Shown: one piece after another, positions 1,096 through 54,201 of the stretch
Layout: each line of letters opens with the position of its first letter
Position numbering within the stretch: position 1 is the stretch's first letter
Virus record (IMG/VR): IMGVR_UViG_3300037805_000644
Location: 124,001 to 188,000 of that record
Length of the DNA: 64,000 nt
Direction: 5' to 3' (one strand)
The notes under the pieces: model-generated
The model's database searches: none
Told to the model about the DNA's origin: nothing
What the model saw: only the letters and a program-made list of their open reading frames with translations
Made by a program: the position numbers and the translations under genes

Positions 1096-1308
1096 ATGGA
1101 CCAGCAAACCCGAGACCTGCTGAACGCAGCAATCAACGGAGCCCGAATGGCGGCTCGACGCGCCCGTCAGCCATTCGAGGGGCAGCGCAATGATCAGGCC
1201 CGTATCGCAAACGCTGCGGCCACCCAAATTGAGATGGCAGGGCTGGCCCTAGCCGGCCTGCGAGAGCAAGCCGATGCGGGGCCCGACCTTTTTGAGAATA
1301 GGGGGTAA
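1096..1308 (+). CDS. hypothetical protein
   Basis: GAGGAG RBS, 70 aa. Confidence 0.7.
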   Translation: MDQQTRDLLNAAINGARMAARRARQPFEGQRNDQARIANAAATQIEMAGLALAGLREQADAGPDLFENRG

Positions 1309-1340
1309 CAATCCGGCTTTCGGTAGTAGGTGAGGTGAAC
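1304..1340 (+). promoter_or_regulatory. class I promoter-like motif GGTAAC-N12-GGTAGTAGGTGAGGTGAAC
   Basis: Recurring motif directly upstream of RBS/ATG at 1353. Confidence 0.8.
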
Positions 1341-1352
1341 GAAGGAGGCCAC

Positions 1353-2639
1353 ATGAGCCAGGACACCACCCGCTGCTACACCATCCCAGCCCACAATGAG
1401 GCCGAGTTGCAGAAGCGCCTGAACCTCATGGGTCGACGGGCGGCCAAGCTCGGTCTCCCTGCCCCCACGGCAACTCAGACGGCAGTCGAGTTCCGCCCCG
1501 TTCGGAAAAACGGCAAGCCCGTCCTCACCAGCTCGGGTGAAGCCGTCACCTCCAAGTGGCTCACCTTTGAGGTGAGCGCGGCCATTGTCAAGCTGGCCGG
1601 TTGGACCTTCCTGGGCACCGTCGAGCACACCCCCCATGGGAACATCCTCCGGGCCACTCCGGCGGGTGGTGACCTGGACCTCACCAAGTTCCGCAAGGAC
1701 AAGCCCACCTGCGACCACTGCAACACAAACCGGCAACGCAAGGACACCTACCTGGTTCTCCACGAGACCGGGGAGATTCGGCGAGTTGGCAAGAGCTGCA
1801 TCCAGGCGTTCCTGGGCAAGGATGCCCTGTCCAGCCTGACCTATGAGATTCAGCTCGATGATCTCGATGAGCTGGAAGAGTTCGGCGGGTTCGGGCGCTG
1901 CACGCCCTTCTACGGCATTGGGGATGTCTTGAGCACCACTGCCACCACCATCCGCCGCTTGGGGTGGGTGCCCCGCAGCAAGGCAGATGAGGGCTCCTGG
2001 GCCACCGCTGATGTCGTCTGCATGTGCCTTGCAAACCCTGAGGCTGCCCGTCGGGCGGGTCTCGGCCCCATCCTGGATGATTACACGGACAACGACACCA
2101 AGACGGCCAGCAAGGCCCTGGAGTGGGCACGCTCCATCGATGAGGACACCCCCAACGACTACCTGAGCAACCTGCGGGTTTCCTGCATGGCCGATGACAT
2201 TGAGGGTCGGGGGTTCGGCATCGTGTGTTCGGCGGTCTCCGCCTACAACCGGGAAATCTCCCGGGAAGCCCAACGCAAGGCGGAGCGTGAGGCCACGGCG
2301 GACTCCAAGCACCTGGGCAACATCGGTGACCGGATCAATGCCAAGAAGCTTCCCAAGAAAGACCGGGATGCGGGTAAGTCTGCCATCCCCCCCTTCGAGG
2401 CGACGATCACCCGCTGTTACGCTTTCGAGTCTGACTTCGGGGTCCGAACCCACCTCAAGTTCTGCACCCCTGAGGGCAACGTCCTCGGGTGGTGGGCGGC
2501 TGGCGACTACGACTACGCCGTTGGCGACAAGGTCTGGATCTCCGGCGGCACCGTCAAGAAGCACGGCGAGTACCAGGGTGTCCTTGAAACCACCCTCAAC
2601 CGGGTCAAGCTCCTCAAGCGGGAGCTGGTTGACGCATGA
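1353..2639 (+). CDS. conserved phage protein with CDHC..VGKSC Zn site and C-terminal OB-fold-like domain
   Basis: CDHCNTNRQRKDTYLV..VGKSC and GTVKKHGEYQGVLETTLNRVK; AGGAGG RBS before ATG 1353. Confidence 0.7.
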   Translation: MSQDTTRCYTIPAHNEAELQKRLNLMGRRAAKLGLPAPTATQTAVEFRPVRKNGKPVLTSSGEAVTSKWLTFEVSAAIVKLAGWTFLGTVEHTPHGNILRATPAGGDLDLTKFRKDKPTCDHCNTNRQRKDTYLVLHETGEIRRVGKSCIQAFLGKDALSSLTYEIQLDDLDELEEFGGFGRCTPFYGIGDVLSTTATTIRRLGWVPRSKADEGSWATADVVCMCLANPEAARRAGLGPILDDYTDNDTKTASKALEWARSIDEDTPNDYLSNLRVSCMADDIEGRGFGIVCSAVSAYNREISREAQRKAEREATADSKHLGNIGDRINAKKLPKKDRDAGKSAIPPFEATITRCYAFESDFGVRTHLKFCTPEGNVLGWWAAGDYDYAVGDKVWISGGTVKKHGEYQGVLETTLNRVKLLKRELVDA

Positions 2640-3532: not shown

Positions 3533-3583
3533 CCATCGAAATGTCCCGCTTACTGCCCTGGAGCGCGTTCAGCTCCATCGTTT

Positions 3584-3620
3584 GGTAACTTTTGACCACT
3601 CGGCAGTAGGTAAGGTGAAC
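3584..3620 (+). promoter_or_regulatory. class I promoter-like motif
   Basis: GGTAACttttgaccactcGGCAGTAGGTAAGGTGAAC before RBS/ATG 3632. Confidence 0.8.
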
Positions 3621-3631
3621 AAAGGAGGACC

Positions 3632-3910
3632 ATGAACGTGCCCGTCGAAGAGTTCATCAAGAACGGCACCCAGGAGTTCATCGACCGCGACTTCCGGGTC
3701 ACCGTCGAGTTCTCGACCACCCCCGAAAAGATCGGGGTCATCTACCCGTTCATCCGAAAAGCCAACCAGGACCTCCGAGCGGCCTGGGTCAAGGCCACTG
3801 AGAGCAACCCCGAGGCGGCGCTCGGGCGTTGGACCATCACCACCTGTGAGGTCTGCAACGAGTACAGCGAAGGGCATTACCTGCTCGTCGAGATCGAAAG
3901 GATCCCATGA
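3632..3910 (+). CDS. hypothetical protein
   Basis: AAGGAGG RBS, follows class I motif. Confidence 0.75.
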   Translation: MNVPVEEFIKNGTQEFIDRDFRVTVEFSTTPEKIGVIYPFIRKANQDLRAAWVKATESNPEAALGRWTITTCEVCNEYSEGHYLLVEIERIP

Positions 3911-4113: not shown

Positions 4114-4136
4114 TCCTCAAGGATTGGGTCTTTGAA

Positions 4137-4163
4137 GGTAACACCTCAACCACTTGGTAGTAG
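4137..4163 (+). promoter_or_regulatory. class I promoter-like motif (17-nt spacer)
   Basis: GGTAACacctcaaccacttGGTAGTAG. Confidence 0.7.
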
Positions 4164-4196
4164 TTAGGGTAAGCGGAAGCCCTATTGGAGAAACTG

Positions 4197-4463
4197 ATGC
4201 CCGTAACCCTCGCCAACTTGTCGATAACCCCACCGCCAGTGCGACCCACTCCCACCAACACACAGGTGGTGCTCACTTTGTGGATCGTATGCACCCTCGG
4301 GGTTAGCTGTGCTTTCATCGGGCTCACCTGGGGTAATCTCATGGCCCTGCCCACTTGGTGGGCGGCTGTGGGGTTCACCGCAGGGTTACAGTTGTTCGCT
4401 GGGGTGTGTGCCGCCCTCGGGCTCATGGTGGGCATGGGACCCGCCCTTGCGGCGGCTCGATAG
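4197..4463 (+). CDS. small membrane protein (2 TM)
   Basis: Two hydrophobic segments; GGAG RBS before ATG 4197. Confidence 0.6.
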   Translation: MPVTLANLSITPPPVRPTPTNTQVVLTLWIVCTLGVSCAFIGLTWGNLMALPTWWAAVGFTAGLQLFAGVCAALGLMVGMGPALAAAR

Positions 4464-4482
4464 CACTTACAGGAGAAAATCG

Positions 4483-5393: not shown

Positions 5394-5828
5394 ATGAAGC
5401 GCGCCCTCCTCCTCGCCCTCCTTGCAAGTTGCTCGGCTCGACCGAGCCCTTGGGGACACCCCAAGGGCTCCCTCACGAGATGGCCACCCTCAACCCCGCA
5501 ATCCGTTGAGGTGGCCAACCCACACGCTGCATTCAACCGGGCACGCCGGGCAATGGACAACCTGGGGCTGAACTTGCAGGTAGCCGACCGATCCTTGGGG
5601 ATCCTCACCACGGAATGGACAAGCCGAGCCGCTGGGTGTGGGGAGATGTTCTCTTGCCCAAAGGGGCACATCCAGATCCGTTACCGGGTGGTGGTGACCA
5701 AGACCCAGGCCACGGTCTCCATCCAGTCTCGTAAGGGCTACCGTAAGCTAGAACACCACCCTGCGACCGAGGAAGCTCTCCGAAACCAGGAGTTCCTGGC
5801 TCAAGCTCTCGCAGATCTTTGGCGGTAA
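5394..5828 (+). CDS. lipoprotein, BamC/NlpB helix-grip-like
   Basis: Signal peptide with lipobox LASC; AFNRARRAMDNLGLNLQVADRSLGILTTEW resembles a BamC-type domain. Confidence 0.6.
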   Translation: MKRALLLALLASCSARPSPWGHPKGSLTRWPPSTPQSVEVANPHAAFNRARRAMDNLGLNLQVADRSLGILTTEWTSRAAGCGEMFSCPKGHIQIRYRVVVTKTQATVSIQSRKGYRKLEHHPATEEALRNQEFLAQALADLWR

Positions 5829-5860
5829 CTTTCAACCACTCGGTAGTAGGTAAGGTGAAC
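5824..5860 (+). promoter_or_regulatory. class I promoter-like motif
   Basis: GGTAACtttcaaccactcGGTAGTAGGTAAGGTGAAC. Confidence 0.8.
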
Positions 5861-5877: not shown

Positions 5878-6291
5878 ATGAAACAGCTACCGCAGAATGC
5901 TCAAGAGTTGGTGGAGTACCTTGGCGACGGCTGGACCGTGTGGGTGCCGGAACCCTGGCCCGATTACCTGGGAGACCTGGGGCCGACGGCAGGGGACGAG
6001 CGTGTGGGTGCTCAGAAAGAAGGTTGGGCTGTTTTTATCGAGTATTTCGAGACGGACGGAACGCTCTACCAAGGAGAGTTGGCAGGTATCGACAACACAG
6101 GGTACCTGGACACGCCTGAGGAGGTACTGCGTAATCTCGAACGTACTCGCGAGATTGTTATTGAGAAAGCCCAAAAGAGGTTGGCTCAGTGGCAGCAGAT
6201 CAAAACGCTGGCGGAGTTGTCGGCTACGTCGACTCAAGGCAGCGGCTCTGCCCCGCATCTGGCTGCCGGAACCACTTGTCACGGGCGCTGA
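5878..6291 (+). CDS. hypothetical protein
   Basis: Follows class I motif; 3' end overlaps a convergent gene. Confidence 0.65.
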   Translation: MKQLPQNAQELVEYLGDGWTVWVPEPWPDYLGDLGPTAGDERVGAQKEGWAVFIEYFETDGTLYQGELAGIDNTGYLDTPEEVLRNLERTREIVIEKAQKRLAQWQQIKTLAELSATSTQGSGSAPHLAAGTTCHGR

Positions 6292-18130: not shown

Positions 18131-18226
18131 TTGGATCTCCAGGGCGGTTCCTGGCCTATCGTACCCCGCTGGGGTAACAACCTACCCCTTTCAGAGTAAG
18201 GGGTAAGGACTGACCGGAGGGTTCAA

Positions 18227-18472
18227 TTGGAACGGAATAGCAAACTGGGGAAGATGCTCAGGCAAACCACAGAGCTTGCCTGGGAGCGAAGGGCCAAATC
18301 TGCGGAGGAGTGGGCGAAAGCAGCAGAGGTCAGGCTGGTGGCGGCTCATGCTCGGGCGGAAACCTTTAAGGGTGAACTCGGCACTACCCGGCGCTTGAGC
18401 CTGACACTGGTGCTCCTGGTGATCCCCCTCAGTGCCGAAATGCTCCTGCGGGGGCTAGGCTGGGTGGGCTAA
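18227..18472 (+). CDS. small coiled-coil protein with C-terminal TM
   Basis: Preceded by a class II motif (18145-18159), a class I variant (18173-18199) and GGAGG. Confidence 0.55.
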   Translation: MERNSKLGKMLRQTTELAWERRAKSAEEWAKAAEVRLVAAHARAETFKGELGTTRRLSLTLVLLVIPLSAEMLLRGLGWVG

Positions 18473-22809: not shown

Positions 22810-22846
22810 GGTAACTCCTGAGGAGTTGGTAGTAGGCAAGGTGAAC
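22810..22846 (+). promoter_or_regulatory. class I promoter-like motif
   Basis: GGTAACtcctgaggagttGGTAGTAGGCAAGGTGAAC. Confidence 0.8.
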
Positions 22847-22859: not shown

Positions 22860-23294
22860 ATGAACGTGAACATCGCAAGTGTCAAGGCCCTCTACACCAA
22901 CCCTGAGTTTCTGGTCCTCCTTGCTGTGCTGGAGCTGGCTCAGGAGGAATCCGCCCGACTCCGAGCCCTGGTTGACGCCTACTCCCAGCCCATTCTGGAC
23001 AAGGCGGGGCTGGTGGACGATGAGGGAAACCCCATCACCGACCTGCGCCGGGCTTGGCTCTGCCAGGACGGCGATGCCTGCGACGCCTACTATGCTGCCC
23101 GCCTCCAGGCCAACAACGACAACGGGTTCGACCTGGGGGATAGCTGCCCGGCTCTCGTCGCTGAGAGCAGTGTCACTGACGCTGAGAATGCCTTGATTGC
23201 TGCTGCCAACACCCACTATGGGCTGCCCACCATCTACAACCTGGACCTGCGGGCAAAGTACCTGGACTTGCTCACCAACCCACCCCGCCACTAA
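22860..23294 (+). CDS. hypothetical protein
   Basis: Single plus-strand gene behind a class I motif within the structural region. Confidence 0.75.
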   Translation: MNVNIASVKALYTNPEFLVLLAVLELAQEESARLRALVDAYSQPILDKAGLVDDEGNPITDLRRAWLCQDGDACDAYYAARLQANNDNGFDLGDSCPALVAESSVTDAENALIAAANTHYGLPTIYNLDLRAKYLDLLTNPPRH

Positions 23295-27457: not shown

Positions 27458-27805
27458 ATGAATGGCGGACTTCACCTTTATCTAATCCAGGCGCACACCA
27501 CTGGGGCCTTCAAGGTCGGCCGCTCCTCTAACCCGGAGCGGCGCTTGAAGGAACTCCAGACAGGCAGCCCTTTCGAGCTTCGGATCATCCTCGTGATCGA
27601 GAACTCAGGGCACCGTGAGAAACCCCTCCACCGCCGACTGCACGGGTACCGATCCCAGGGCCACCTCAAGGGAGAGTGGTTCATTGAACCCGCCCTGGGT
27701 GAGCTTCCTGACGATGTCTATGATCAGCTCGATCTGGACACGGTCAATGAGTGGTGGGTGTCCGAAGCCGGGCCCATCCACCACCCGGGACCCCCCACCC
27801 GGTAA
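27458..27805 (+). CDS. GIY-YIG-like T5orf172/Mug113 domain protein
   Basis: LYLIQ..FKVGRSSNPERRLKELQTGSP..GEWF. Confidence 0.85.
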   Translation: MNGGLHLYLIQAHTTGAFKVGRSSNPERRLKELQTGSPFELRIILVIENSGHREKPLHRRLHGYRSQGHLKGEWFIEPALGELPDDVYDQLDLDTVNEWWVSEAGPIHHPGPPTR

Positions 27806-27853
27806 CAGCACACCCCCTTTCGAGTAGAGACCCTGAACTTCTAGGGGACCCCC

Positions 27854-28102
27854 ATGGATGAAGACCTGGACAACCTGCCCCTCTGGGTGGCAGCTCTTGC
27901 GGTATTGACCCTGATGATCACCCACATGATCCCGCTGGTGTTCCTGGCAACCGCCGCTTGGGTGCTGGGTTCTGCGGTCTCAAGCTCCACCTGGGTATCT
28001 GCCCTATTGATTATTCTGACGGTAGCCGTTTACGACACCCTGTGGAACCGCACGGTGGACCGCCTCATTCTGAGGTACGGCGATCCAGGAGAGCAAGAAT
28101 GA
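27854..28102 (+). CDS. small membrane protein
   Basis: Hydrophobic segments; class I motif at 27801-27827. Confidence 0.6.
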   Translation: MDEDLDNLPLWVAALAVLTLMITHMIPLVFLATAAWVLGSAVSSSTWVSALLIILTVAVYDTLWNRTVDRLILRYGDPGEQE

Positions 28103-29126: not shown

Positions 29127-29163
29127 GGTAACTCTGAGAAAGTCAGTAGTAGGTAAGGTGAAC
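29127..29163 (+). promoter_or_regulatory. class I promoter-like motif
   Basis: GGTAACtctgagaaagtcAGTAGTAGGTAAGGTGAAC. Confidence 0.8.
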
Positions 29164-29202: not shown

Positions 29203-30576
29203 ATGCGTAACTGGATCGCCCTCGTCACTCTTACCCTCGCCACCACCTTCACCGGGTGCGGAGATGGCGGATTTTCAGCAGAGAACCCCATGCAGGTGCT
29301 CACAGATGTCTCTGTGAGCGGGGAGGTGAACCCCGACGCCGAACCTGATGAGGCGGTCTTTGATGCGGGCGTCCCTGATGCGGACGCCGAAGCCGACGCG
29401 GGGCCCGACGCCGAAGCCGACGCGGGGCCCGACGCCGAAGCATCCGACTCAGGCCCCCCCGATGTGGGGGTGCCGGACAGCGGGCCGATCACTGAGCCGG
29501 ACCCCTTGCCGGCCCCTGTGGGGGATGGGGACGCCTGCACCTGGGACGTGTGTGATAACGAGGGCTGCATCCAGGTACCCCGCTCCAGCTTCCACGGGCT
29601 GCCGGACAACCGGGGCATCCTTTACGGGGGCGTTGTCCTTCCCGGGGGCGACTTTGTTTTCGCGGGTAACAACGGCAACCAGGCCCGCCACACCCGGATG
29701 GGGCACTCTGGGGCGTGGGATCCCTGGCCCCTCGGTGCGGGGATTGGGCGAAACATCCTTGTGCAAGGCAACACCCTGGTTGGCTTTGTTGGTCGTGTTA
29801 TCCTAGAGGGGGGCATTCGGGGTCTCCGGCTGGTGACGCAAGACCCCGAGGATGGTGACCTCTTGGTGGATACGACCATCACAGGAGCGGACATGCTGGG
29901 ATTCACCCCCCACCCCGATGGGGGGTATGCCGCCCTGATTTACATCCGGGGCTCGGGGTTCGCCACCGTTCGTTACTCCTCACAGGGGGCGGTGCTGTGG
30001 TCTTACCCCCTGCATTCGGGACTCGGTCGAGACCTGGTGCCTGCCCCCGACGGGTTCTACACCTCAGCAGACGTGATGGGTGCCTCCGAGGTGATCCGGT
30101 ACGGCTTCGACGGCCAGGAGCTGTGGGTTGCCTCAATTCCGAGCAAGGTAGGTATCAGCATCCAGATGTTGGCCGCCACTGCCGAGGGGGGCGTCCTTCT
30201 CAGCACCGTCGCACCGGATGGGGTCCCCCAGGTTACTTACCTGAGCCCCGAGGGGCATGAGCATTGGACCACCCGCCTGGAGATGGAGGCTGAGGAGTTT
30301 CGGACCGATCCGGTTGGCGTCATTGCCTCGGCTGATGGCATCTATGTGGTGGGGAATCGCAGGTCCATTGCCACCAACCAGGAAAATGTCTTCGTGGGCC
30401 GGCTGAGCGAAGAAGGCAACCTGGAAGACCTGTGGCTCTGGGAAGGTGCGGAGGGGACAGCGCGGCTGTACGGGGTGATGGCCCTCCCCGAGGGGGGTGT
30501 GGTGGCTTACGGTGAGATGGGGTTCACCCCATACTGGCAGGTCCTGGACGCCCGTGGGCGGTGCCCTTTCCTCTAG
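29203..30576 (+). CDS. lipoprotein with Asp/Ala/Pro linker and beta-propeller-like domain
   Basis: Lipobox FTGC; DAGPDAEA repeats; DGDACTWDVC; repeated RY..G..LW blades. Confidence 0.75.
   Translation: MRNWIALVTLTLATTFTGCGDGGFSAENPMQVLTDVSVSGEVNPDAEPDEAVFDAGVPDADAEADAGPDAEADAGPDAEASDSGPPDVGVPDSGPITEPDPLPAPVGDGDACTWDVCDNEGCIQVPRSSFHGLPDNRGILYGGVVLPGGDFVFAGNNGNQARHTRMGHSGAWDPWPLGAGIGRNILVQGNTLVGFVGRVILEGGIRGLRLVTQDPEDGDLLVDTTITGADMLGFTPHPDGGYAALIYIRGSGFATVRYSSQGAVLWSYPLHSGLGRDLVPAPDGFYTSADVMGASEVIRYGFDGQELWVASIPSKVGISIQMLAATAEGGVLLSTVAPDGVPQVTYLSPEGHEHWTTRLEMEAEEFRTDPVGVIASADGIYVVGNRRSIATNQENVFVGRLSEEGNLEDLWLWEGAEGTARLYGVMALPEGGVVAYGEMGFTPYWQVLDARGRCPFL
29383..29441 (+). repeat. 24-bp coding tandem repeat (about 2.5 copies)
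   Basis: gacgccgaagccgacgcggggccc x2 plus partial. Confidence 0.85.
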
Positions 30577-35900: not shown

Positions 35901-35937
35901 GGTAACTCTGAGCCCTTTCCTAGTAGATAAAACGAAC
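35901..35937 (+). promoter_or_regulatory. class I promoter-like motif
   Basis: GGTAAC-N16-GTAG...GAAC. Confidence 0.7.
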
Positions 35938-35952: not shown

Positions 35953-37128
35953 ATGGGAAACCTCGAAAACCTGACCCTCATGCGGATGCTTGCCCAGGTC
36001 ACCTCCGACCTTGGAGTCAGTGAGCACACCTATGTTGTGGGGGGTGCTGTCCGGGACTTTGCCCTGGAGCGCCCCATCAAAGACATCGACGTGGTCACAG
36101 ACACCGTCAGCGGCGGAATGAGCAGTGAGCAACTGGCCAAGGCTCTGGCCTCCCTTTCCCCGGGATCCGGTCTGGTCACCAACAACTATGGGGTGGCCAT
36201 CCTCACCCTGGGCCGTCGTGACTGGGAGGGGGTATCCCTCAAAGGGATGGTGGTCGAGATCGCCAACGCTCGCAAGGAGAGTTACGGGGGTCATGGGGGG
36301 AAAGGATACAAACCCCACATGGTGGAACCTGCCACCATCCTGGAGGATGTGGTCCGGCGTGAGTTCCGGTTCAACACCCTCCTGCTGCGAATGTCCGATC
36401 TCCGTGAGGGCCCCCAGAGGGCAAAGGTTCTTGACCTGACCGGAGAGGGCCTGGGGGATCTGGCACGCGGAGAGATGATCTGCCCTGCGAACCCAAACAA
36501 GGTGTTCACCGATGATCCGACTCGGATGCTTCGGGCCATCAAGTTCGGGATGCGCTTTGGGTTCACCCTTGGTGACCAGGAGTGCCGGGCCATCCGGGCC
36601 CATGCACACGCCCTGGCCAAGGTGCCTCAGAACGCAGTCGCCACGATCCTGATCGAGAACATCTTCAAGGTGGACACGAGCCGGGGTCTGGATTGGCTGT
36701 ACCAGCTTGGTCTGGTGCCCGTCATCCAGGACATGCTGGAGGATGAGCCCAACTTCAAGACAACCCTGACCAACTGGGCACGGACCAATGTCGAGGACAT
36801 GCTCTGCCTGGCCATTTACGGGGGGTTTCAGGTCACGGGGGGCTTACGACACCTCCTGGGGGGAGATCCCGTCGGCAAGTCCTCGGAGGGGCTGTACCGC
36901 CTCGAAAAAGCCCTTGCAATCTTTGAGGGGGATGCTGAGAAGGCCCTGGCCCTCGTCGAAGCCATCAAGCAGCCGGGGCGGGTGATGGACACCCGAGCCC
37001 TTGCCGCCCAGCGGGGGCTCAAGGGGGCGGGGATGCGGATTCTGATGGTGGAGGCTCGGGAGCTTCTACTGGAGAACCCGAGCCTGGTGTTCGGCGGCCT
37101 CAATGAGGCAATGGGTCTCCAGGGGTAA
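35953..37128 (+). CDS. class II tRNA nucleotidyltransferase (CCA-adding/poly(A) polymerase family)
   Basis: VGGAVRD, DID, ARKESY, EDVVRREFRFN, DDPTRMLR. Confidence 0.9.
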   Translation: MGNLENLTLMRMLAQVTSDLGVSEHTYVVGGAVRDFALERPIKDIDVVTDTVSGGMSSEQLAKALASLSPGSGLVTNNYGVAILTLGRRDWEGVSLKGMVVEIANARKESYGGHGGKGYKPHMVEPATILEDVVRREFRFNTLLLRMSDLREGPQRAKVLDLTGEGLGDLARGEMICPANPNKVFTDDPTRMLRAIKFGMRFGFTLGDQECRAIRAHAHALAKVPQNAVATILIENIFKVDTSRGLDWLYQLGLVPVIQDMLEDEPNFKTTLTNWARTNVEDMLCLAIYGGFQVTGGLRHLLGGDPVGKSSEGLYRLEKALAIFEGDAEKALALVEAIKQPGRVMDTRALAAQRGLKGAGMRILMVEARELLLENPSLVFGGLNEAMGLQG

Positions 37129-37273
37129 CCTCCCGGGGTTGGTCTGCACGTAAGGTGGTGATCTCGGCTTCCAGCCGAGCCGTCCTGATGCGGAGCCCTG
37201 AGATGGTCCCGTACTGTGCCTGGATCTTCTCCAATTGAGCGATCCGGCCCTTCATTTCTTTTTCAGTCATCAT
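37100..37273 (-). CDS. small hypothetical protein
   Basis: Start MMTEKEMK overlapping upstream gene end. Confidence 0.45.
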   Translation of the reverse strand: MMTEKEMKGRIAQLEKIQAQYGTISGLRIRTARLEAEITTLRADQPREVTPGDPLPH

Positions 37274-37502
37274 CACCAGCACTCCCCGGAAGGTCTCCAC
37301 TGAAAGCAGTGCAGTGGGGGTTCTCGCCCTTGCTGCCCTGCACCCACTCCCGGGGGTACTCGGGCTCGTGGATCTCATGAAGCATGGCACGCAGCATGAT
37401 GCCACACCCCTCCTCCGGGTCGTCCTTGGCGCAACGGTCGCACCATCTCCCCTCGAAAATCATCCCCTCAGATCCATTGCTCGGTCGGTATGGCTTGGTC
37501 AT
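37263..37502 (-). CDS. conserved small Cys-rich phage protein
   Basis: YRPSNGSEG..WCDRC..C..PREW..CTAF. Confidence 0.7.
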   Translation of the reverse strand: MTKPYRPSNGSEGMIFEGRWCDRCAKDDPEEGCGIMLRAMLHEIHEPEYPREWVQGSKGENPHCTAFSGDLPGSAGDDD

Positions 37503-38191
37503 GCTTTAATCCTTGGATCCTTGGGGCCGTCCACACGCAGGACCTCCACCCCGTTTTTCTCTAGGTACTCGATGCCGTTCTCTCCGGCATAGCCACCCTC
37601 GATGATGTAAACTCGCTGGATGCCCGAGTGGTGGATGAGCTTACTGCACATCCGGCAGGGCTCCCCAGTGCAGATGAGCCACGCCCCTTCGGTGGCCACC
37701 CCACCAGCCGCTGCGTTGCAGACCACGTTCATCTCAGCATGGTGGCAGCCCACCTCCATACAGGTCCCCGACTTGACCCCGGGATATTTCACCAAAAGGG
37801 CAGCGGCATACTGATGGGCCTCAGCCTTTCCATCCGGCCGGGGGACTTCCTTACCCCCTGAGTGCAAGGTCGGGTAAACTTTTGGGAACGTCTTCTCGAC
37901 CTCCCCCTTGACCCGGACCAGGTAACTGTCCTCCCGGCGAACAGGGATGCGGAGGGGAGGCAAACCCTCGGTGATCTCGATGTCCTCTCGCTTGAGCCCG
38001 TCCCGCTCACAGAAAGATCCGCCGCAAAGGGTGCCCTCTGCTCCCCGGGGGCCTCCGTTGTACCCGTCCATCAGGACGACGTTCCGCTTGGGGTCCAGGA
38101 GCATGGCCCCGAACTTGCGGCGGGGGCAGTTGCTGGCATTCGAGAGGGACAGGCACTGTTCGATGCGGATGGCAAGGTGCTTAGGCTTCAC
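37499..38191 (-). CDS. dCMP deaminase (ComEB-like) with insertion
   Basis: CPRRKFGA, GYNG, HAEMN, PCRMC. Confidence 0.9.
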   Translation of the reverse strand: MKPKHLAIRIEQCLSLSNASNCPRRKFGAMLLDPKRNVVLMDGYNGGPRGAEGTLCGGSFCERDGLKREDIEITEGLPPLRIPVRREDSYLVRVKGEVEKTFPKVYPTLHSGGKEVPRPDGKAEAHQYAAALLVKYPGVKSGTCMEVGCHHAEMNVVCNAAAGGVATEGAWLICTGEPCRMCSKLIHHSGIQRVYIIEGGYAGENGIEYLEKNGVEVLRVDGPKDPRIKA

Positions 38192-45671: not shown

Positions 45672-47352
45672 GGGTACTCCTTCCTTTCAGCTCAAGATAC
45701 CGAGCTGCGAGGGTCCGAATCTCGACAGACGGGATGGTGTGTACAGTCCACACCTCACCGTTGATGAGCATATCGGAGAGATACCGAGGGTCAGGCGCCT
45801 CAGACCCACGCTTGTGGCGGGGTCGGGGGATGTCCCAATCCAGGCCGAGAGCATGATCGAGCACTGCAAGGACATGCTTGCAAACCCCATGCTCATGCAC
45901 AGGATCCTTGATCACGGGGAAGCTGGCCGTGCCCCGAGGCTTCCCATACAGGTAGCCGTTCTGCTTGGCCCAGTGCTCGGGCCCCTGCCAACGCCAGTAA
46001 GGGCAGTCGCAGGAAAGAAACACGTCAGCCTTGGACAGCCGTCGGGCATTGCCCTTGGTCTTGCCCTGAACCCGGACCCTGTAAGTACCGGAATTGCCGT
46101 TCACGTCGAAAAGCCACATCCCGTTGCGCTGGTCTACCTTCTTGAGCTTCCAGGTCAGGCCGGTCACCTTCTCCCGGATGCTGTCGTCCACACCCGACAT
46201 GATGTCGGAGATGCGGAAAGCGAACCTCCGACCCTCTTTATTTTGGAAATCGTGCCCCTCGGGGATGACCTTAGCGGACCCGGGGTTGTTCGTAACCTCA
46301 CCGAAATCGTTGAAGGTTTTCATCCCGGGGTTCCGCTTCTTTTTGCGCACCCGCTCTTTGCGGTCCGTGGCCCGGTCGTATGCCTGCCCTGGGGGGTCTT
46401 TGCGGTCCACCCGCTCATACAGCATCTCTGCGGTGTGCATCGCCTCTTGGTACCCTAGGGCCTTGTCCAGGTACCCGAAAAAGTAATCATCATCGATGAC
46501 GGCCTCGTCGAAAAACTCCACCAAAGGCCGGCTCTGGTACATGCCCCCCACCTGGAAAGTCACCCACCCTGTGAGCTGGGAGACGCCCATCACCACACCC
46601 CAAGCCTGAGTGGGGAGATGGTAAAACCCAACGGGGCGGAACAGCGCCTCAGCCTTCTTCTCGCCGGGCTTGTCTTTCCGGTTCTTCAACTTCTCGCGGT
46701 ACTCGGTCCCCCGCTGCTTGAGAGTGCTGGCCCCCCCAGGCTTGCGCTCGAACCTCTCAGGCTTCTCCTTTCGCCTCTCCTGGTCCCGCTGGTAGGTCCC
46801 CTTGTTCTTGGCCCGGGCATACCACCGCTCCATGCGGCTGCGTACCTTGCCCCGGTTTTTCTGGTACCACTTCTGGAAGTACCGCTTGGCCTGGCCACGC
46901 TGTTCTTTCTGTCGGTCGGACCCTGGGTAAGGCTTGCCCTGGGCCGCGCCCATGCGTTGAAGTACCGACAGGATCTCCTCCTGGGTGGGCATGATGGGAT
47001 CATAAAGCTGGGACTCCTCCTCGCTCTCCCCATACACGCCAGGTCGACGGGTGTTCATCCCTGGACCCGACTGGGCTGGAGAGCCCTTAGAGCCAGGGTG
47101 TTCACCCCCGGGCTCGCTTTGGGTGCGAGCCTTGTCCTTGTGGATGGACTTGTTGCCCTCACCTGTGCCGCTCGGGCCCGGGGTGTTGAAGTTGTGGGGG
47201 CCGCTCTTGGTCGTGTTGGTCCACTGAGGGCTAGGGAGCGCAGAAGGCTTCCTCTCATCCCTCCCCGGCACCGTGGGCTTGGTTCCCGGTGACGGATTCT
47301 TGACGACGGTACGGACCCCACTCAGGTCCTGGGAGCGGCTTGATGTCTTCAT
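45652..47352 (-). CDS. SWIM Zn-finger domain protein with disordered basic N-terminus
   Basis: SCDCPYW..CKHVLAV. Confidence 0.75.
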   Translation of the reverse strand: MKTSSRSQDLSGVRTVVKNPSPGTKPTVPGRDERKPSALPSPQWTNTTKSGPHNFNTPGPSGTGEGNKSIHKDKARTQSEPGGEHPGSKGSPAQSGPGMNTRRPGVYGESEEESQLYDPIMPTQEEILSVLQRMGAAQGKPYPGSDRQKEQRGQAKRYFQKWYQKNRGKVRSRMERWYARAKNKGTYQRDQERRKEKPERFERKPGGASTLKQRGTEYREKLKNRKDKPGEKKAEALFRPVGFYHLPTQAWGVVMGVSQLTGWVTFQVGGMYQSRPLVEFFDEAVIDDDYFFGYLDKALGYQEAMHTAEMLYERVDRKDPPGQAYDRATDRKERVRKKKRNPGMKTFNDFGEVTNNPGSAKVIPEGHDFQNKEGRRFAFRISDIMSGVDDSIREKVTGLTWKLKKVDQRNGMWLFDVNGNSGTYRVRVQGKTKGNARRLSKADVFLSCDCPYWRWQGPEHWAKQNGYLYGKPRGTASFPVIKDPVHEHGVCKHVLAVLDHALGLDWDIPRPRHKRGSEAPDPRYLSDMLINGEVWTVHTIPSVEIRTLAARYLELKGRSTHAPLQL

Positions 47353-50594: not shown

Positions 50595-50633
50595 AAAAGA
50601 AAAACCCTCGACACACAAGGTGTCGAGGGTTTT
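50595..50633. terminator. bidirectional intrinsic terminator
   Basis: aaaaccctcgacac-acaag-gtgtcgagggtttt; longer U-tract on minus strand. Confidence 0.9.
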
Positions 50634-50816: not shown

Positions 50817-52196
50817 CTAGCGGTACTTATCCGCAGTGTAAGAGATTTCGGGAACCTCCACCGAACTCTTGGGGGTGACCCCCGCCTCTGCCTCGATCCG
50901 TGCCGTCAGGTTACGCTGGGACTTGTCCGCCAAGGCGGTTCGCCGCTCATGGGCAGCCTGCACCTGCACCAACTCCAGGTGCAGCTCCTTGATGCGAATC
51001 GACTCCTGCCGCAAAATCTCCAGGCTTGCGTCCAGGTCGATCTGCTCCTGCACATGTCGCAGACGTGCCCGCTCCAGAGCGGCCTCCTCTCGGGCTTCCT
51101 GGTCGGCGGCCAGCTTGGGCAACCATTCCTGGTTGAGGTAATAAGAGAGCGCCGCAGCATGACCCCCACTCAGCTTGAGGTGCCGGGCCTCTGCCTCCAG
51201 GACTACCTCGTACTGCGTCTCGATGTGGAACATGCTTGGGGCCTCCTCGGGCAGCAAGTCCTCGGGGATCTCCTCGGGATCCAAGCCCTCGGGGGTCAGG
51301 CTCGGAGGCTCAGGCGACGCGGAGAGGGGCCCCCACAGGGTGGGAGACGCGGAGGCCAAGGTCACCAGGGCGGGACGGGGGACCGGCTTCGGCGCGAGGC
51401 GTGCCCGCATCGGACAGGCTCCTTCAAGCAGGGCGTCAAAATCGACATCCTCATCGCCCCCACCCGTCTCTGGCTCCGAGAGGGCCTTGGTGGTGTCCGA
51501 GATCACCCTGGAGACCACCTCCTCAGTGATATCCCGCTCAGGAGCCTTGGTGGTGAGCGCATTCGCAGCCACACCCTCTGCCAGCGCAGTATCCCTCGCG
51601 ATCACGGGTGTGGCCTGCCAGGCCCCTCCGATGCGCTCGACGGCACCCGCCCAGGCCCAGGCGGCACCCGGGGGGGCGTCAGGCACCTCAAGGCCGTTGC
51701 GGAGTGCCCGGAGTGCCCGGAGTGCCTGATTCGGAGTCAGGGCACTACGCTGGGCCACCTGGAGAGGAGTCAGCAAACCATCTGCCTGCTGGAGGATGGC
51801 CATCACCAAAAGGCTGGCGGCATGATCCTTCGAGCGGGGGCTCAGCAGGAAAGATGCCCAGTCCGCAGCCTCCAGGCGGGCCCAGACCAGGGACCCATAG
51901 TGGGTGATCTTGAACAGGGGGTCCCCAACGCCGGAACCAGTCCCTTGGTAGAAGACAAGGTTGGAGCCCTCAGCCAGAAGGGCAAGGTGTGCGAACACCC
52001 GGTTGTAGCTCCCGGACGACCGGAAAGTCTTCCCCGTGTGGAGGGACACATGGCCGCCAATGGTGGCCATGTCCAGGCGTCGGCCCTGCTTAGCAAGCTG
52101 AGCAGCAGCTCCGAAAGTCAGGAGGGTGGCCCAAGAGGGCGTGTTGACCCTGCGATGGATACCGTGAATGTCGAAAATGTTGGTCGTATCGGCCAC
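50817..52196 (-). CDS. hypothetical protein (possible wHTH plus coiled coil)
   Basis: 459 aa, AAGGAG RBS; class I variant at 52228-52254. Confidence 0.65.
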   Translation of the reverse strand: MADTTNIFDIHGIHRRVNTPSWATLLTFGAAAQLAKQGRRLDMATIGGHVSLHTGKTFRSSGSYNRVFAHLALLAEGSNLVFYQGTGSGVGDPLFKITHYGSLVWARLEAADWASFLLSPRSKDHAASLLVMAILQQADGLLTPLQVAQRSALTPNQALRALRALRNGLEVPDAPPGAAWAWAGAVERIGGAWQATPVIARDTALAEGVAANALTTKAPERDITEEVVSRVISDTTKALSEPETGGGDEDVDFDALLEGACPMRARLAPKPVPRPALVTLASASPTLWGPLSASPEPPSLTPEGLDPEEIPEDLLPEEAPSMFHIETQYEVVLEAEARHLKLSGGHAAALSYYLNQEWLPKLAADQEAREEAALERARLRHVQEQIDLDASLEILRQESIRIKELHLELVQVQAAHERRTALADKSQRNLTARIEAEAGVTPKSSVEVPEISYTADKYR

Positions 52197-52372
52197 AGGT
52201 TTTTTACTCCTTGTCCTGTCGAGAGAACTACCCTTTATGAGGTAGATCGTTACCCCCTATCTCCACCAGCCCGGTACTGCGGCTATCCTCAACGGGTAAA
52301 GAGTCGGTGGCGACCTGCCTCTCGGTGGTTTCTGGGCTCGCTGTTTTACCTCGACGACTCAAAGGAGTTGCC

Positions 52373-53872
52373 ATGAATCATTGGTGGGAAGAATACGCCG
52401 ACCTATACTCGGACCGTATTGTCAAAGGAAGGCGATCAGCGAGCCGCATCGCCAGCATGACGGGACTCACTCTGACACATGCCTCCGCCCTGGCCGCTTT
52501 CTGTCGCCGAGGTATCACACCTTGCCCCGATCTGGACGACCCCCGCGCCACCAGCACACCCCCGGACGCGGTGCCCCCTGTAGAAGAGGGTGATGGCGAG
52601 GTCACTGAGAAAGAGGCCAGCCAGTTTTTCCTCGACTCCGACTACTTCTACAACAAAGCTGACGACAGCTACGTCACCTGGATCCCGGGCCTCCCCAAGC
52701 CCCTGAACCTCCCCGGCGAGGTCCACCGAGAGATCGTACGGGCCTACAGCAACTACGATGATCAGCCTGCCAGCATCAACCAGATCGCCAGGACCGTGGG
52801 CTTCCCTCGATCCTGGTTGGTCAAGTACCTGCGAGTTCACGGTATCACCCACGACCGGGAGCCCTTCACACCCGAGGAGCTGATGGGCCGCACGGATGAT
52901 GACCTCATCCAGGATGCTCTCCAGCTTCGACGCATGGCGGTCTACAAGAAACTGGAGAAAGCCAAGTGGGCAGATATCCGCAATGATGCCATGAAGTGGC
53001 GGGACCTGGAGACCCATTTTGTGCTCCCGCTCCTGTCGGCATTGGCCGACCGGGAGCCAGCGGTGGTGCGGCCCATCCCCATGAAAACTGCCCAGACCCC
53101 CTTTGCAGGGGTGGTCGGCCTCACTGACTTCCACTGGGGCAAGTACAGCGACCCGGCTGAGAACTTTGAGGCGTTTGACAAGAACATGGCGCGGGAGCGT
53201 CTGTTCGGGGCCACCGAGGACATTGCCTCCAGGCTCCAGCATCTCGGTCGGCCTGAGAAGCTGTATGTGCCCATCGGCTCGGACTTCCTGCATGTGGACA
53301 CCGAGCAGGGCACCACCACCAGCGGGACTCAGCAAGATATGGACGGGACACCTGCTGAGATGCTGGTTTCTGGTTGCCAGCTCATGGAGGAGTGGATCCT
53401 CACACTCACCCAGATCGCACCTGTTGAGCTGGTCCTCATGAGTGGGAACCACGACCGTCTGACGGGCTTGGCTATTCTGCTGTACCTGGAGGGGGTCTTC
53501 CGCACCAATGACAAGGTGACCGTGCGGCTGGACCGGACCCCGAGGGTGTACCGGGCCTACGGGAAAAACCTGATCGGGTTCATCCACGGCGATGGTGTCA
53601 AGAAAACTACGGACATGGCAGGCCACATGAGCCGGGAGGCTTCCCGACACTGGCACGCCTGCCCGCACAAGACCGTCTACACGGGACACCTCCACCACGA
53701 GAAAACCGAGACCGACGTGGCTTTCGGGGTGACTCGCCGCCAGCTCCCCTCCCTGGCGGGCTCAGATCGTTGGCACGCCCTTAATGGGTACGTTGGGGCA
53801 CCTAAGGCTCTCCCACTCTACCTGCATGATCGGGAGCGGGGCCTCCTGACGGTTCTCTACAGCCCCGCCTAA
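52373..53872 (+). CDS. calcineurin-like metallophosphoesterase with N-terminal extension
   Basis: TDFH, GSD, GNHD, HGD, GHLH; class II motif at 52272-52286. Confidence 0.88.
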   Translation: MNHWWEEYADLYSDRIVKGRRSASRIASMTGLTLTHASALAAFCRRGITPCPDLDDPRATSTPPDAVPPVEEGDGEVTEKEASQFFLDSDYFYNKADDSYVTWIPGLPKPLNLPGEVHREIVRAYSNYDDQPASINQIARTVGFPRSWLVKYLRVHGITHDREPFTPEELMGRTDDDLIQDALQLRRMAVYKKLEKAKWADIRNDAMKWRDLETHFVLPLLSALADREPAVVRPIPMKTAQTPFAGVVGLTDFHWGKYSDPAENFEAFDKNMARERLFGATEDIASRLQHLGRPEKLYVPIGSDFLHVDTEQGTTTSGTQQDMDGTPAEMLVSGCQLMEEWILTLTQIAPVELVLMSGNHDRLTGLAILLYLEGVFRTNDKVTVRLDRTPRVYRAYGKNLIGFIHGDGVKKTTDMAGHMSREASRHWHACPHKTVYTGHLHHEKTETDVAFGVTRRQLPSLAGSDRWHALNGYVGAPKALPLYLHDRERGLLTVLYSPA

Positions 53873-54138
53873 TCGGCATCGTGGTAAGCCTCCTCCCGGG
53901 TGAGCACATTGAAGCACCGGGGGGCAGTCCCGTCGGCCAACATCGCCTCCCGCACCTTCTGAGGGACGTAGCTGTTCATGAGCTGCATGTCGGCCCGAGA
54001 AAGCAACACACCCCCTTCGATGTCGATGACCTCAGGCACCGTGCCCTTGAGGCGCATCTCCTGCCGGGCCTCTTCCGAGAGGAGGCCCAGCAGGAGGTTG
54101 ATGTCGTTGGTGCTCATGTAAACGGTAGCGGTGCTCAC
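53869..54138 (-). CDS. hypothetical protein
   Basis: Downstream of class I motif at 54167-54201. Confidence 0.65.
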   Translation of the reverse strand: MSTATVYMSTNDINLLLGLLSEEARQEMRLKGTVPEVIDIEGGVLLSRADMQLMNSYVPQKVREAMLADGTAPRCFNVLTREEAYHDAD

Positions 54139-54166
54139 AGTGTCCCCTTTGTCCCTGTTTTCTCTC

Positions 54167-54201
54167 TCACCTCACCTACTACCGAGGCGCCGAGAGTTAC
54201 C
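54167..54201 (-). promoter_or_regulatory. class I promoter-like motif
   Basis: GGTAACtctcggcgcctcGGTAGTAGGTGAGGTGA. Confidence 0.8.

What the first reader, a model, noticed from the sequence alone, without database searches (positions are those of the whole stretch)
1304..54201. ECF-sigma-like motif GGTAAC-N16/17-GTAG(GTRAGGTGAAC) heading small accessory gene cassettes, 11 copies
Seen: full-length copies at 1304, 3584, 5824, 22810, 29127 (+) and 54201 (-); core-only copies at 4137, 18173 (GTAA), 27801, 35901 (+) and 52254 (-). Each lies shortly upstream of a non-structural gene, several of them lone genes antisense to the structural operons. Knowledge: an AAC-type -35, GT-type -10 and 16-17-nt spacer is typical ECF sigma architecture. 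The conserved GTRAGGTGAAC extending past the expected +1 is unusual and could be an activator site or recombination handle. Inference: an early/middle regulon driven by a host or phage ECF sigma.
Basis: partly seen in the sequence, partly recalled or inferred. Interest (0 to 1): 0.7.

Follow-up and report, generated by a model that had tools for sequence, protein, structure and literature searches.

The report
Portable promoter heading phage orphan genes
A repeated two-part DNA signal in a giant marine phage is most likely the phage's own non-standard promoter, attached like a plug to single orphan genes inserted between conserved genes; it shows how huge phages acquire and express new genes, though which sigma factor reads it is unknown.

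Summary
GGTAAC-N16/17-GTAG occurs 10 times in the window (0.04 expected), plus the GTAA variant at 18173. The 223-kb parent contig holds 25, from a marine huge myophage (~0.5 Mb) distantly related to Agrobacterium phage Atu_ph07.

Every copy lies 48-76 nt upstream of, and co-oriented with, a start codon. The invariant columns are GGTAAC and GTA, 16±1 nt apart. The 'full-length' copies add a conserved block, GGTGAGGTGAAC or GGTGAGAGAGAA, at the expected transcript start.

The genes behind the motif are unrelated orphans. Only 2 of 22 have a homologue in the 485-kb relative LR745208, against 82 of 200 other genes. They sit between genes that are adjacent in relatives.

A closer relative (L058) carries the same motif before a different orphan at the same junction. 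LR745208 has about 50 copies of a different bipartite motif that matches the sigma-28 consensus, and an ECF-like sigma gene behind a perfect sigma-70 promoter.

Best reading: a portable promoter-plus-leader module, analogous to a T4 PeSL or a moron, read by an alternative sigma rather than a sigma-70-consensus one.

The ECF resemblance is real for the -35 and the spacing. No cognate sigma was found in this fragment, and no transcript data exist.

The parts
1304..1340 (+). Full-length motif (GGTAAC-N14-TAGTAG-GTGAGGTGAAC). The TAA inside GGTAAC is the stop codon of the upstream gene 1096-1308.
1353..2639 (+). Downstream gene, 428 aa, phrog_2319 (unknown function). No homologue in LR745208.
3584..3620 (+). 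Full-length motif (CAGTAG variant).
3632..3910 (+). Downstream orphan gene, 92 aa.
4137..4163 (+). Core motif with 15-nt gap before TAGTAG and a degenerate leader (TTAGGGTAAG).
4200..4463 (+). Downstream small ORF, 87 aa from the ATG. It is in frame with the ORF listed at 4185-4463. My gene caller missed it.
5824..5860 (+). Full-length motif. The TAA of GGTAAC is the stop codon of gene 5394-5828.
5878..6291 (+). Downstream orphan gene, 137 aa.
18173..18199 (+). Weak or core variant, GGTAAC-N17-GTAA.
18227..18472 (+). Lone 81-aa antisense ORF (TTG start). It lies between two genes whose orthologues are 3 nt apart in LR745208.
22810..22846 (+). Full-length motif. Its spacer is a palindrome that, read on the - strand, gives a hairpin plus T-run.
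22860..23294 (+). Lone 144-aa antisense orphan. At the same junction L058 has a different 68-aa orphan with the motif, and L059 and LR745208 have no insert.
27801..27827 (+). Core-only motif (GGTAAC-N17-GTAG, class with GAGTAG). The TAA of GGTAAC is the stop codon of gene 27458-27805.
27854..28102 (+). 82-aa orphan, absent between the orthologous flanking genes in L058.
29127..29163 (+). Full-length motif with the longest leader (76 nt to the ATG).
29203..30576 (+). Lone 457-aa antisense gene. Its 33%-identical orthologue in L058 keeps the motif.
35901..35926 (+). Core motif (strong A-tract plus GGTAACTC, TAGTAG, degenerate leader).
35953..37128 (+). Lone antisense gene, 391 aa, tRNA nucleotidyltransferase / poly(A) polymerase head domain.
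52228..52254 (-). Core-only motif (GGTAAC-N17-GTAG, GGGTAG).
50817..52196 (-). Downstream 459-aa orphan (GTG start), flanked by + strand genes.
50601..50633 (.). 14-bp-stem bidirectional terminator-like hairpin downstream of the 50817-52196 cassette.
54165..54201 (-). Full-length motif with the GGTGAGAGAGAA leader subtype. A second GGTAAC at 54217 holds the stop codon of the upstream gene 54213-55403.
53869..54138 (-). Downstream 89-aa orphan (GTG start).

Best explanation
The motif is the core of a promoter specific to this phage lineage. It has a -35-like GGTAAC (often preceded by an A-tract), a 16±1-nt spacer and a -10-like aGTAg.

In its 'full-length' form the motif continues into a conserved block, GGTGAGGTGAAC or GGTGAGAGAGAA. 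This block would be the first bases of the transcript. It forms a short leader that carries an extra Shine-Dalgarno-like GAGGTGA ahead of the gene's own ribosome-binding site.

Promoter, leader and one orphan gene form a portable unit, analogous to T4-type PeSL cassettes and to phage morons. These units are inserted between conserved genes of a ~0.5-Mb marine myophage, often antisense to the structural operons, so each newcomer is expressed independently.

The phage has no RNA polymerase of its own, so host core polymerase must read the motif. It must do so with a sigma that does not have sigma-70-consensus specificity. The form fits an ECF-like two-domain sigma. By analogy with the relative LR745208, the sigma is more likely phage-encoded, in the unsequenced ~58% of the genome, than a host stress sigma.

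Shown: the motif statistics, geometry, orphan association, insertion polymorphism and conservation in a close relative. Inferred: promoter activity, transcript start, the identity of the sigma, and timing.
For: 1. Non-random and geometrically constrained. There are 10 matches against 0.04 expected and 25 against 3 in the contig. All lie 48-76 nt upstream of co-oriented starts. 27 of 144 GGTAAC hexamers are in that position against about 4 expected.

2. Invariant columns. Across 11 window copies and 2 copies from a related phage, the invariant columns are exactly GGTAAC and GTA, plus one spacer T, with spacing varying by ±1. The spacer is otherwise free. This is the pattern of a two-element sigma-type promoter.

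3. The genes served are unrelated orphans. They show no paralogy. Only 2/22 have a homologue in LR745208 against 82/200 for the rest, Fisher p=0.002. They lie between genes that are adjacent in LR745208, and at the 22810 junction also in L059.

4. Evidence from the closest relative, L058 (86% aa on a neighbouring gene). It has the motif before a different 68-aa orphan at the same junction as the 22810 cassette. It also has it before the 33%-identical orthologue of 29203-30576. It lacks the 27854 orphan together with its motif.

5. Not sigma-70. There are 0, 5 and 1 consensus matches in the three thirds of the window, against 3.8, 4.1 and 3.3 expected. None lies at the motif. The whole contig has none at >=10/12.

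6. No phage RNA polymerase. Pfam beta-subunit and T7-like models find nothing in this contig or in the 485-kb relative.

7. Precedent in the clade. LR745208 has about 50-68 copies of an analogous bipartite motif, CTAAA-N15-GCCGATAG. They lie before small genes (median 94 aa), of which 0/49 have a homologue here. It also encodes a weakly ECF-like sigma (TIGR02937 region 2, E 1e-3) behind TTGACA-16-TGcTATATT.

8. The -35 GGTAAC carries the AAC core typical of ECF promoters (PMC5758882). It matches GTAAC(A/G) of C. glutamicum SigD (PMC6338062) and GTAACC of Caulobacter SigF (PMC3511200).
Against: - No transcript 5' ends are available. No RNA run was listed.
- No sigma with region 2 is detectable in the 223-kb fragment. 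The relative's sigma family has no member here.
- The -10 GTAG is not one of the -10s I compared (CGT, GAT/GTT, CGAA); I did not compare all ECF groups.
- The 11-nt conserved block after the -10 is not explained by sigma recognition. It may reflect common descent of the module rather than function.
- Only one cassette (50817-52196) has a clear terminator.
- Gene calls are from my own simple caller.
Confidence: 0.6

Rival explanations
1. Host alternative sigma. The motif is read by a host-encoded ECF (or other alternative) sigma, so the cassettes are expressed only when that host stress regulon is active.
For: The architecture is ECF-like: an AAC -35, a 16-17-nt spacer and a G-T-N -10 (PMC5758882, PMC6338062, PMC3511200). 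No phage sigma with region 2 was found in the fragment.
Against: A phage that depends on a conditionally active, anti-sigma-controlled host factor for about 25 genes would be unusual. The related phage carries its own ECF-like sigma behind a sigma-70 promoter. The extended motif was not found in 185,579 species genomes, although a host promoter would share only the core. The host is unknown.
Confidence: 0.15
2. Unusual housekeeping-sigma promoter. These are immediate-early promoters read by the host primary sigma, with a phage-specific extended consensus, as in T4 early promoters and PeSLs.
For: T4-type phages use strongly conserved early promoters with an A-rich upstream region, placed before orphans in hyperplastic regions (PMC2839356, PMC4122927). 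An A-tract precedes GGTAAC at about 10 of 17 strong sites. GTAACT shares 3/6 positions with TTGACA.
Against: No TAnnnT-type -10 can be placed. The position that would be -7 is G or A in TAGTAG and TAGGTG. The tool's sigma-70 scan never hits the motif. The relative has textbook TTGACA/TATAAT promoters, which it uses for other genes rather than for its cassettes. Related phages differ in both halves of the motif, which is hard to square with the conserved specificity of primary sigmas.
Confidence: 0.12
3. Activator-dependent promoter. A phage DNA-binding protein, for example the conserved 209-aa protein with two sigma region-4 domains, binds GGTAAC and/or GGTGAAC and recruits polymerase, as in T4 MotA-type sigma appropriation.
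For: The contig encodes a protein with two region-4 helix-turn-helix domains (Pfam 1.7e-9; model pLDDT 81 with sigma-4 structural matches). It lies next to a NusG-like gene and a clamp-loader-like gene. GGTAAC and GGTGAAC look like a 30-bp-spaced direct repeat.
Against: Both recognition helices (SQPTVxYRLxRA and SQGxVRHRF) are nearly invariant (conservative changes only in one paralogue) across 35 family members. These include LR745208, whose cassette motif is entirely different. This protein therefore cannot set the lineage-specific motif. Sigma appropriation also needs a sigma-70 -10, which is absent. Core-only copies lack GGTGAAC yet keep the geometry.
Confidence: 0.05
4. Not primarily a promoter. 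The repeat would be a recombination or insertion scar of cassette mobility, or an RNA-level element such as a processing site, translational operator or standby ribosome site, with transcription coming from elsewhere.
For: The conserved block includes a perfect anti-SD complement, GAGGTGA. Identity between copies 1304 and contig 46238 runs through the RBS into the first codons of unrelated proteins. Stop codons of upstream genes sit inside GGTAAC at four sites.
Against: Lone genes antisense to the surrounding operons have no other visible source of transcription. Core-only copies keep GGTAAC/GTAG at fixed spacing without the leader. There is no Rfam family and no consistent secondary structure. 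These functions may be additional to, rather than instead of, promoter activity.
Confidence: 0.08

Closest known systems
PeSLs (promoter-early stem-loops) of T4-type phages (Arbiol et al. 2010, PMC2839356; Comeau et al. 2014, PMC4122927)
   Same: Both are conserved intergenic promoter modules with an A-rich tract upstream of the -35 and a Shine-Dalgarno at the 3' end. Both are repeated before orphan genes in plastic regions of large T4-related myophages. In both, indels between relatives coincide with the modules.
   Different: PeSL promoters match the sigma-70 consensus and carry a G/C stem-loop terminator. Here the consensus is not sigma-70, and a stem-loop is seen at only 3-5 of 17 sites. 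Recombination between copies is inferred here, not shown.
ECF sigma-dependent promoters, e.g. C. glutamicum SigD (GTAAC(A/G) / GAT; PMC6338062) and Caulobacter SigF (GTAACC-N16-CGAA; PMC3511200)
   Same: An invariant -35 with an AAC core (GGTAAC), a 16±1-nt spacer and a short -10 beginning with G-T.
   Different: The -10 is aGTAg rather than CGT, GTT, GAT or CGAA. No cognate sigma/anti-sigma pair was found. A long conserved block follows the -10. The promoters serve about 25 phage orphan genes rather than a stress regulon.
Phage morons (promoter-gene-terminator units inserted between conserved genes)
   Same: Single genes with their own upstream signal are inserted between genes that are adjacent in relatives, often in the opposite orientation.
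   Different: All units share one highly conserved phage-specific promoter instead of assorted host-type promoters. A terminator is clear for only one unit.
Sigma-28 (FliA) promoters, TCTAAAG-N14-GCCGATAA (PMC12784957)
   Same: The equivalent motif of the relative LR745208, CTAAA-N15-GCCGATAG, fits this consensus in both elements and in spacing. In our motif, TCGGTAG aligns with its CCGATAG at 5/7 positions.
   Different: Our motif does not fit. The position that would be the flipped A(-11) is G, and the conserved -35 is GGTAAC rather than TAAA.

Membership tests
ECF sigma-dependent promoter | -35 element with a conserved AAC core | tested here: met
   GGTAAC is invariant in 13/13 aligned copies. 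The AAC criterion is from PMC5758882. GTAAC-type -35s are known for SigD (PMC6338062) and SigF (PMC3511200).
ECF sigma-dependent promoter | Group-specific short -10 (CGT, GTT, GAT and the like) 16-18 nt downstream of the -35 | tested here: inconclusive
   An invariant GTA lies 16±1 nt after AAC. The spacing fits. GTAG is not one of the -10s I compared (CGT, GAT/GTT, CGAA); I did not compare all ECF groups.
ECF sigma-dependent promoter | A cognate two-domain (sigma-2 / sigma-4) sigma factor is present | tested here: not met
   No Sigma70_r2 or TIGR02937 region-2 match in the 223-kb fragment. The relative's ECF-like sigma family is absent. About 58% of the genome (CheckV estimate) and the host are unseen, so absence is not established.
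ECF sigma-dependent promoter | Transcription start a few nt downstream of the -10, dependent on that sigma | not testable with these tools
   No RNA run was listed. DNA runs hold only identical low-coverage copies.
Sigma-70 consensus promoter | TTGACA-N16-18-TATAAT, with A at position 2 and T at position 6 of the -10 | tested here: not met
   None of the consensus hits coincides with a motif copy and there is no enrichment. The contig has 0 sites at >=10/12.
Sigma-28 / FliA promoter | TAAA-N15-GCCGATAA | tested here: not met
   By hand alignment CTCGGTAG matches GCCGATAA at 4/8, with G at the -11 position. The A-tract at the TAAA position is present in only about 10/17 sites. The feature is met by the relative's motif (PMC12784957).
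PeSL (T4-type mobile regulatory cassette) | Repeated conserved promoter module in intergenic regions before orphans of plastic regions | tested here: met
PeSL (T4-type mobile regulatory cassette) | Promoter of sigma-70 consensus | tested here: not met
PeSL (T4-type mobile regulatory cassette) | Associated stable stem-loop acting as a terminator | tested here: not met
   Mean folding z-score is about 0 for the core and -0.65 for the 60 nt upstream. Only 3-5 of 17 sites have z < -2. A hairpin plus T-run is seen on the opposite strand at 22813-22827 only.
PeSL (T4-type mobile regulatory cassette) | Recombination between copies creates indels or mini-circles | tested here: inconclusive
   Presence/absence and replacement of orphans occur at motif-bearing junctions between this phage, L058, L059 and LR745208. 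Breakpoints were not mapped, and no joints were seen in DNA contigs.
Moron | Insertion between genes that are adjacent in relatives | tested here: met
   The 18227 and 22860 units lie between genes whose LR745208 orthologues abut or overlap. The 27854 orphan is absent from L058.
Moron | Own terminator | tested here: inconclusive
   Clear only for 50817-52196 (hairpin at 50601-50633).

The most novel reading that the evidence does not exclude
Related huge phages would each carry a private, orthogonal sigma/promoter pair. Here the pair would be an ECF-like GGTAAC/GTAG type, and in LR745208 a sigma-28-consensus type driven by a phage sigma that is itself under a sigma-70 promoter.

The promoter module would serve two roles. 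It would be the universal expression plug for newly acquired orphan genes, and it would be the homology patch through which these genes are shuffled.

Switching the sigma/promoter pair between lineages would then reset which acquired genes can be expressed. It would also isolate lineages from each other's cassettes.
Probability: 0.3. Interest if true: 0.75.

Novelty: new variant of a known kind. Interest (0 to 1): 0.55.

Why it matters
Huge phages (~0.5 Mb) are known almost only from metagenomes, and their gene regulation is essentially uncharted.

This locus gives a concrete, testable promoter class for one marine lineage. It shows that the class marks exactly the fast-turnover orphan genes. 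Comparison with a relative shows that the promoter type changes between lineages while a second, late-type signal stays conserved.

If confirmed, it would extend the PeSL / mobile-regulatory-cassette idea from sigma-70 promoters of T4-like coliphages to alternative-sigma promoters of uncultured giant phages. It would also provide a simple sequence marker for recently acquired accessory genes, and a source of orthogonal sigma/promoter parts.

Tried and rejected
- **Transcript evidence.** No RNA run was listed for the 1304 unit. Four seawater DNA runs hold the same phage at low depth with no variants or joints, so they give no footprint.
- **Scans for the extended motif.** IMG/VR, JGI metagenome contigs and 185,579 species genomes gave no hits.
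- **Other locus searches.** Megablast of two 12-kb pieces against phage records gave nothing. The helicase-based locus search in metagenomes gave nothing. A whole-record search of the Logan/JGI relatives was not possible. The 84%-identical relative's locus came back without DNA.
- **Distant IMG/VR relatives.** G001 and G002 lack the motif.
- **Phage RNA polymerases.** None found.
- **Sigma-54 reading.** Rejected by inspection, because the spacer where the -12 GC would lie is not conserved.
- **MotA-like appropriation.** Rejected for lack of a sigma-70 -10 element.
- **Double region-4 protein as specificity factor.** Rejected because its recognition helices are nearly invariant across phages with different motifs.
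- **Relative's ECF-like sigma.** A profile of this family found nothing in a six-frame translation of our contig.
- **Secondary structure and known RNA families.** Neither found.
- I left it out and did not send it elsewhere.
- **Not used.** No complex prediction was run.


Full report
**Setting**

The window is bases 124,001-188,000 of a 222,939-bp IMG/VR viral contig. CheckV estimates it as 42% complete. It comes from seawater and has about 61% G+C.

PHROG hits to tail sheath, head-maturation protease and helicase mark it as a myophage. A conserved 443-aa protein is 39% identical to Agrobacterium phage Atu_ph07 (490 kb) and 35% identical to Salicola phage SCTP-2 (440 kb). The parent is therefore a huge phage of roughly 0.5 Mb.

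Gene coordinates come from my own codon-usage caller, which found 222 genes with 95% coding. They are approximate at start codons.

**The observation**

GGTAAC-N16/17-GTAG matches 10 times in the window against 0.04 expected. The copy at 18173 has GTAA.

Six copies continue into GTAGGTRAGGTGAAC with at most 2 mismatches. The contig has 25 core matches, against 3 for the backward control. A position-weight scan gives 17 strong sites against 1 in the reversed sequence.

Every copy points at a start codon 48-76 nt downstream of GGTAAC, most often 49-54 nt. GGTAAC alone is placed there 27 times out of 144, where about 4 are expected. No copies in the window were missed.

**Anatomy**

I aligned the 11 window copies with two copies from a related phage. 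The invariant columns are GGTAAC and GTA, plus one spacer T. A-GTA-G is nearly invariant, and the spacing varies by ±1.

About 10 of 17 strong sites have an A-tract just upstream, and T-C often follows GGTAAC.

Two classes appear.
It has (C)TCGGTAGTAG followed by GTGAGGTGA and then either AC or GAGAGAA.
- Class 2 is 'core-only'. Examples are 27801, 52254, 18173 and contig 3168, 25298, 45142. It has a 17-nt spacer with a C-run and an A/T-run before G(A/G)GTAG, and no conserved leader.

Both classes keep GGTAAC and GTAG at fixed spacing. These two elements are therefore the likely recognition elements. The extra block in class 1 is a separate feature.

If the start lies 6-8 nt after the -10, the transcript begins within GGTGAAC. 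It would then carry GAGGTGA, a 7-nt complement of the 16S rRNA 3' end, ahead of the gene's own AAGGAGG. This is inference.

The TAA inside GGTAAC is the stop codon of the upstream gene at 1304, 5824 and 27801. At 54217 a second GGTAAC plays that role.

**What the motif serves**

Of the ten proteins downstream of the motif that I searched in Pfam and PHROGs, only two have any hit. One is a tRNA nucleotidyltransferase (35953-37128). The other is a PHROG of unknown function.

The proteins are not paralogues of one another.

The closest complete relative in GenBank phages is LR745208.1. It is 485,034 bp with 55% G+C, and was found through a 52%-identical protein. Only 2 of 22 motif-driven genes have a homologue there, against 82 of 200 other genes (Fisher p=0.002).

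Synteny shows that these genes are insertions:
- The flanks of the 18227 unit are 3 nt apart in LR745208.
- The flanks of the 22860 unit overlap in LR745208.

A closer relative is L058, from a Logan contig of another sample. It is 86% identical on the neighbouring gene and 58.7% G+C. It has GGTAAC-N-CAGTAG-ACAAGGTGAAC before a different 68-aa orphan at exactly the 22860 junction. It also has the motif before the 33%-identical orthologue of 29203-30576. It lacks the 27854 orphan together with its motif.

L059 (78% identical) has no insert at that junction, and neither L059 nor L060 (76%) has the motif.

The unit of gain and loss is therefore 'motif plus one gene'.

**What reads it**

The motif is not a sigma-70-consensus promoter. 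Such sites are not enriched in the window, and none coincides with a copy. The whole contig has none at 10/12 matches or better. No TAnnnT can be placed.

No phage RNA polymerase is detectable here or in LR745208, so host core enzyme is used.

In form the motif fits ECF promoters.
- ECF promoters have an AAC core in the -35 (PMC5758882).
- GTAAC-type -35s are documented for C. glutamicum SigD, with -10 GAT (PMC6338062).
- They are also documented for Caulobacter SigF, GTAACC-N16-CGAA (PMC3511200).
- The spacing fits. The -10 GTAG does not match the -10s I compared (CGT, GAT/GTT, CGAA); I did not check all ECF groups.

No sigma with region 2 was found in the fragment.

**The relative's system**

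LR745208 lacks our motif. De novo k-mer analysis of its upstream regions found about 50-68 copies of cGATTTCrCTAAAAAGT-N10-GTGCCGATAGGGTaTTGAGGA. They lie 22-28 nt before the start codons of small genes with a median length of 94 aa. None of the 49 genes so headed has a homologue in our contig.

This is the same kind of system with a different sequence.

CTAAA-N15-GCCGATAG fits the sigma-28 consensus in both elements and in spacing. The reference is P. aeruginosa fliC, TCTAAAG at -36 to -30 and GCCGATAA at -15 to -8 (PMC12784957).

The same genome has textbook sigma-70 promoters in a few intergenic regions. One of them, TTGACA-16-TGcTATATT, drives a 244-aa protein with weak similarity to ECF sigma region 2 (E about 1e-3).

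That protein family has only 32 members in 5.8 billion proteins. It is absent from our fragment.

This suggests a cascade in which host sigma-70 transcribes a phage sigma, which then serves the cassette promoters. It also suggests that the sigma/promoter pair differs between lineages. For our phage this is an argument by analogy only.

**A candidate that fails**

The contig encodes a 209-aa protein with two sigma region-4 domains, at contig 208,354-208,983. Pfam scores it at 1.7e-9. It has more than 700 homologues on huge-phage contigs. The AlphaFold model has mean pLDDT 81, and its domains match solved sigma-4 domains.

It sits next to a NusG-like gene and a clamp-loader-like gene.

Both recognition helices are nearly invariant across 35 members, with only conservative changes in one paralogue. 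The members include LR745208's orthologue and paralogue. The protein therefore cannot account for motifs that differ between these phages. It is more likely tied to a conserved signal.

**Comparison with known systems**

The best functional analogue is the PeSL of T4-type phages. PeSLs are conserved early-promoter modules with an A-rich upstream tract and a Shine-Dalgarno. They flank orphans in hyperplastic regions and mediate modular shuffling (PMC2839356, PMC4122927).

Two defining PeSL features are not met here:
- the sigma-70 consensus;
- the stem-loop terminator. The folding z-score is about 0 for the core, and only 3-5 of 17 sites are structured.

The units also resemble morons. A clear terminator follows only 50817-52196, at 50601-50633.

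I therefore describe the motif as working like a PeSL or moron promoter module with an ECF-like consensus, not as a member of either family.

**Verdict**

The 'ECF sigma' part is a fair description of form, but membership is unproven. The 'early/middle' timing is untested.

My confidences are:
- about 0.8 that this is a promoter module for orphan cassettes;
- lower that the sigma is phage-encoded.

**Limits**

- There are no transcript data.
- The host is unknown.
- About 58% of the genome is unseen.
- Gene calls are home-made.
- Only one close relative with DNA was available.

Noticed in passing
window 24344, 26456, 31592, 33340, 39693, 41158, 44453 (all - strand); contig-wide list: A second, different upstream signal precedes structural (- strand) genes. 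It has the form (C)CGGTA-N7-8-(C)CTAT(A/C), or G/C-CTATA-C/G, and lies 33-63 nt before the start codons. CCTATA is strongly avoided elsewhere: 20 occurrences against 59 in the reversed control. The CTATAC element is conserved in the orthologous divergent intergenic region of L058, L059 and L060. It is a candidate late promoter, conserved across the clade, unlike the cassette motif.
   Followed up: partly
window 20545-21564 (-): A full-length match to Pfam PF25216 'Volactin', an actin-family protein named in Haloferax volcanii (3.4e-69). It sits among structural genes. More than 2,000 homologues at E<=1e-30 lie on long metagenomic contigs, up to about 400 kb. This looks like an actin-like core gene of this huge-phage clade.
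   Followed up: partly
outside the window: contig 208,354-208,983 (-) = L009:1147-1776:-: A conserved 209-aa protein made of two sigma-70 region-4 domains and no region 2. It lies next to a NusG-like gene (contig 209,078-209,623) and a clamp-loader-like gene. It has more than 700 homologues, and LR745208 has a second paralogue. Its function is unknown. The invariant recognition helices suggest a conserved DNA target.
   Followed up: partly
LR745208.1 (L014-L038), e.g. 12,950; 13,202; 15,297; 74,943: The relative has about 50-68 sigma-28-consensus promoters (CTAAA-N15-GCCGATAG) before small orphans. It also has a divergent ECF-like sigma gene (74,150-74,884, -) behind a perfect extended-10 sigma-70 promoter. 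Several TTGACA-16/17-TATACT promoters have no nearby ORF.
   Followed up: partly
window 1306-1308, 5826-5828, 27803-27805; 54213-54217: The TAA inside GGTAAC serves as the stop codon of the upstream gene at three sites. At 54217 an extra GGTAAC, 16 nt upstream of the real motif, holds the stop of gene 54213-55403. This may be a scar of cassette insertion.
   Followed up: no
window 1326-1365 versus contig 46,259-46,298: Two motif copies share near-identity from TAGTAG through the ribosome-binding site into the first codons (..CCACATGAGCC) of unrelated proteins of 428 aa and 126 aa. One Logan contig in run X2 aligns to the window only between 1324 and 1359 and continues on both sides into the sequence of the contig-46,238 copy. 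This is consistent with recent module transfer or recombination.
   Followed up: partly
window 35953-37128 (+), 26486-27424 (+), 33349-35826 (-): A tRNA nucleotidyltransferase-like gene is one of the motif-driven cassettes. A ThyX (Thy1) gene and an 825-aa protein with a VWA domain lie nearby.
   Followed up: no
outside the window: contig ~10,560-10,650 and ~37,600: Short repeats of AACTTTC / GAAACTTT occur three times in tandem upstream of gene 36,635-37,573 and three times between the divergent genes at 10.5-10.7 kb. They resemble GGAACTT-type -35 elements. They are unexplained.
   Followed up: no
window 55440-55463, 57277-57308, 1042-1060: Strong terminator-like hairpins with 10-14 bp stems and T-runs lie between late genes. 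Overall, terminator-like sites are not enriched over shuffles.
   Followed up: no
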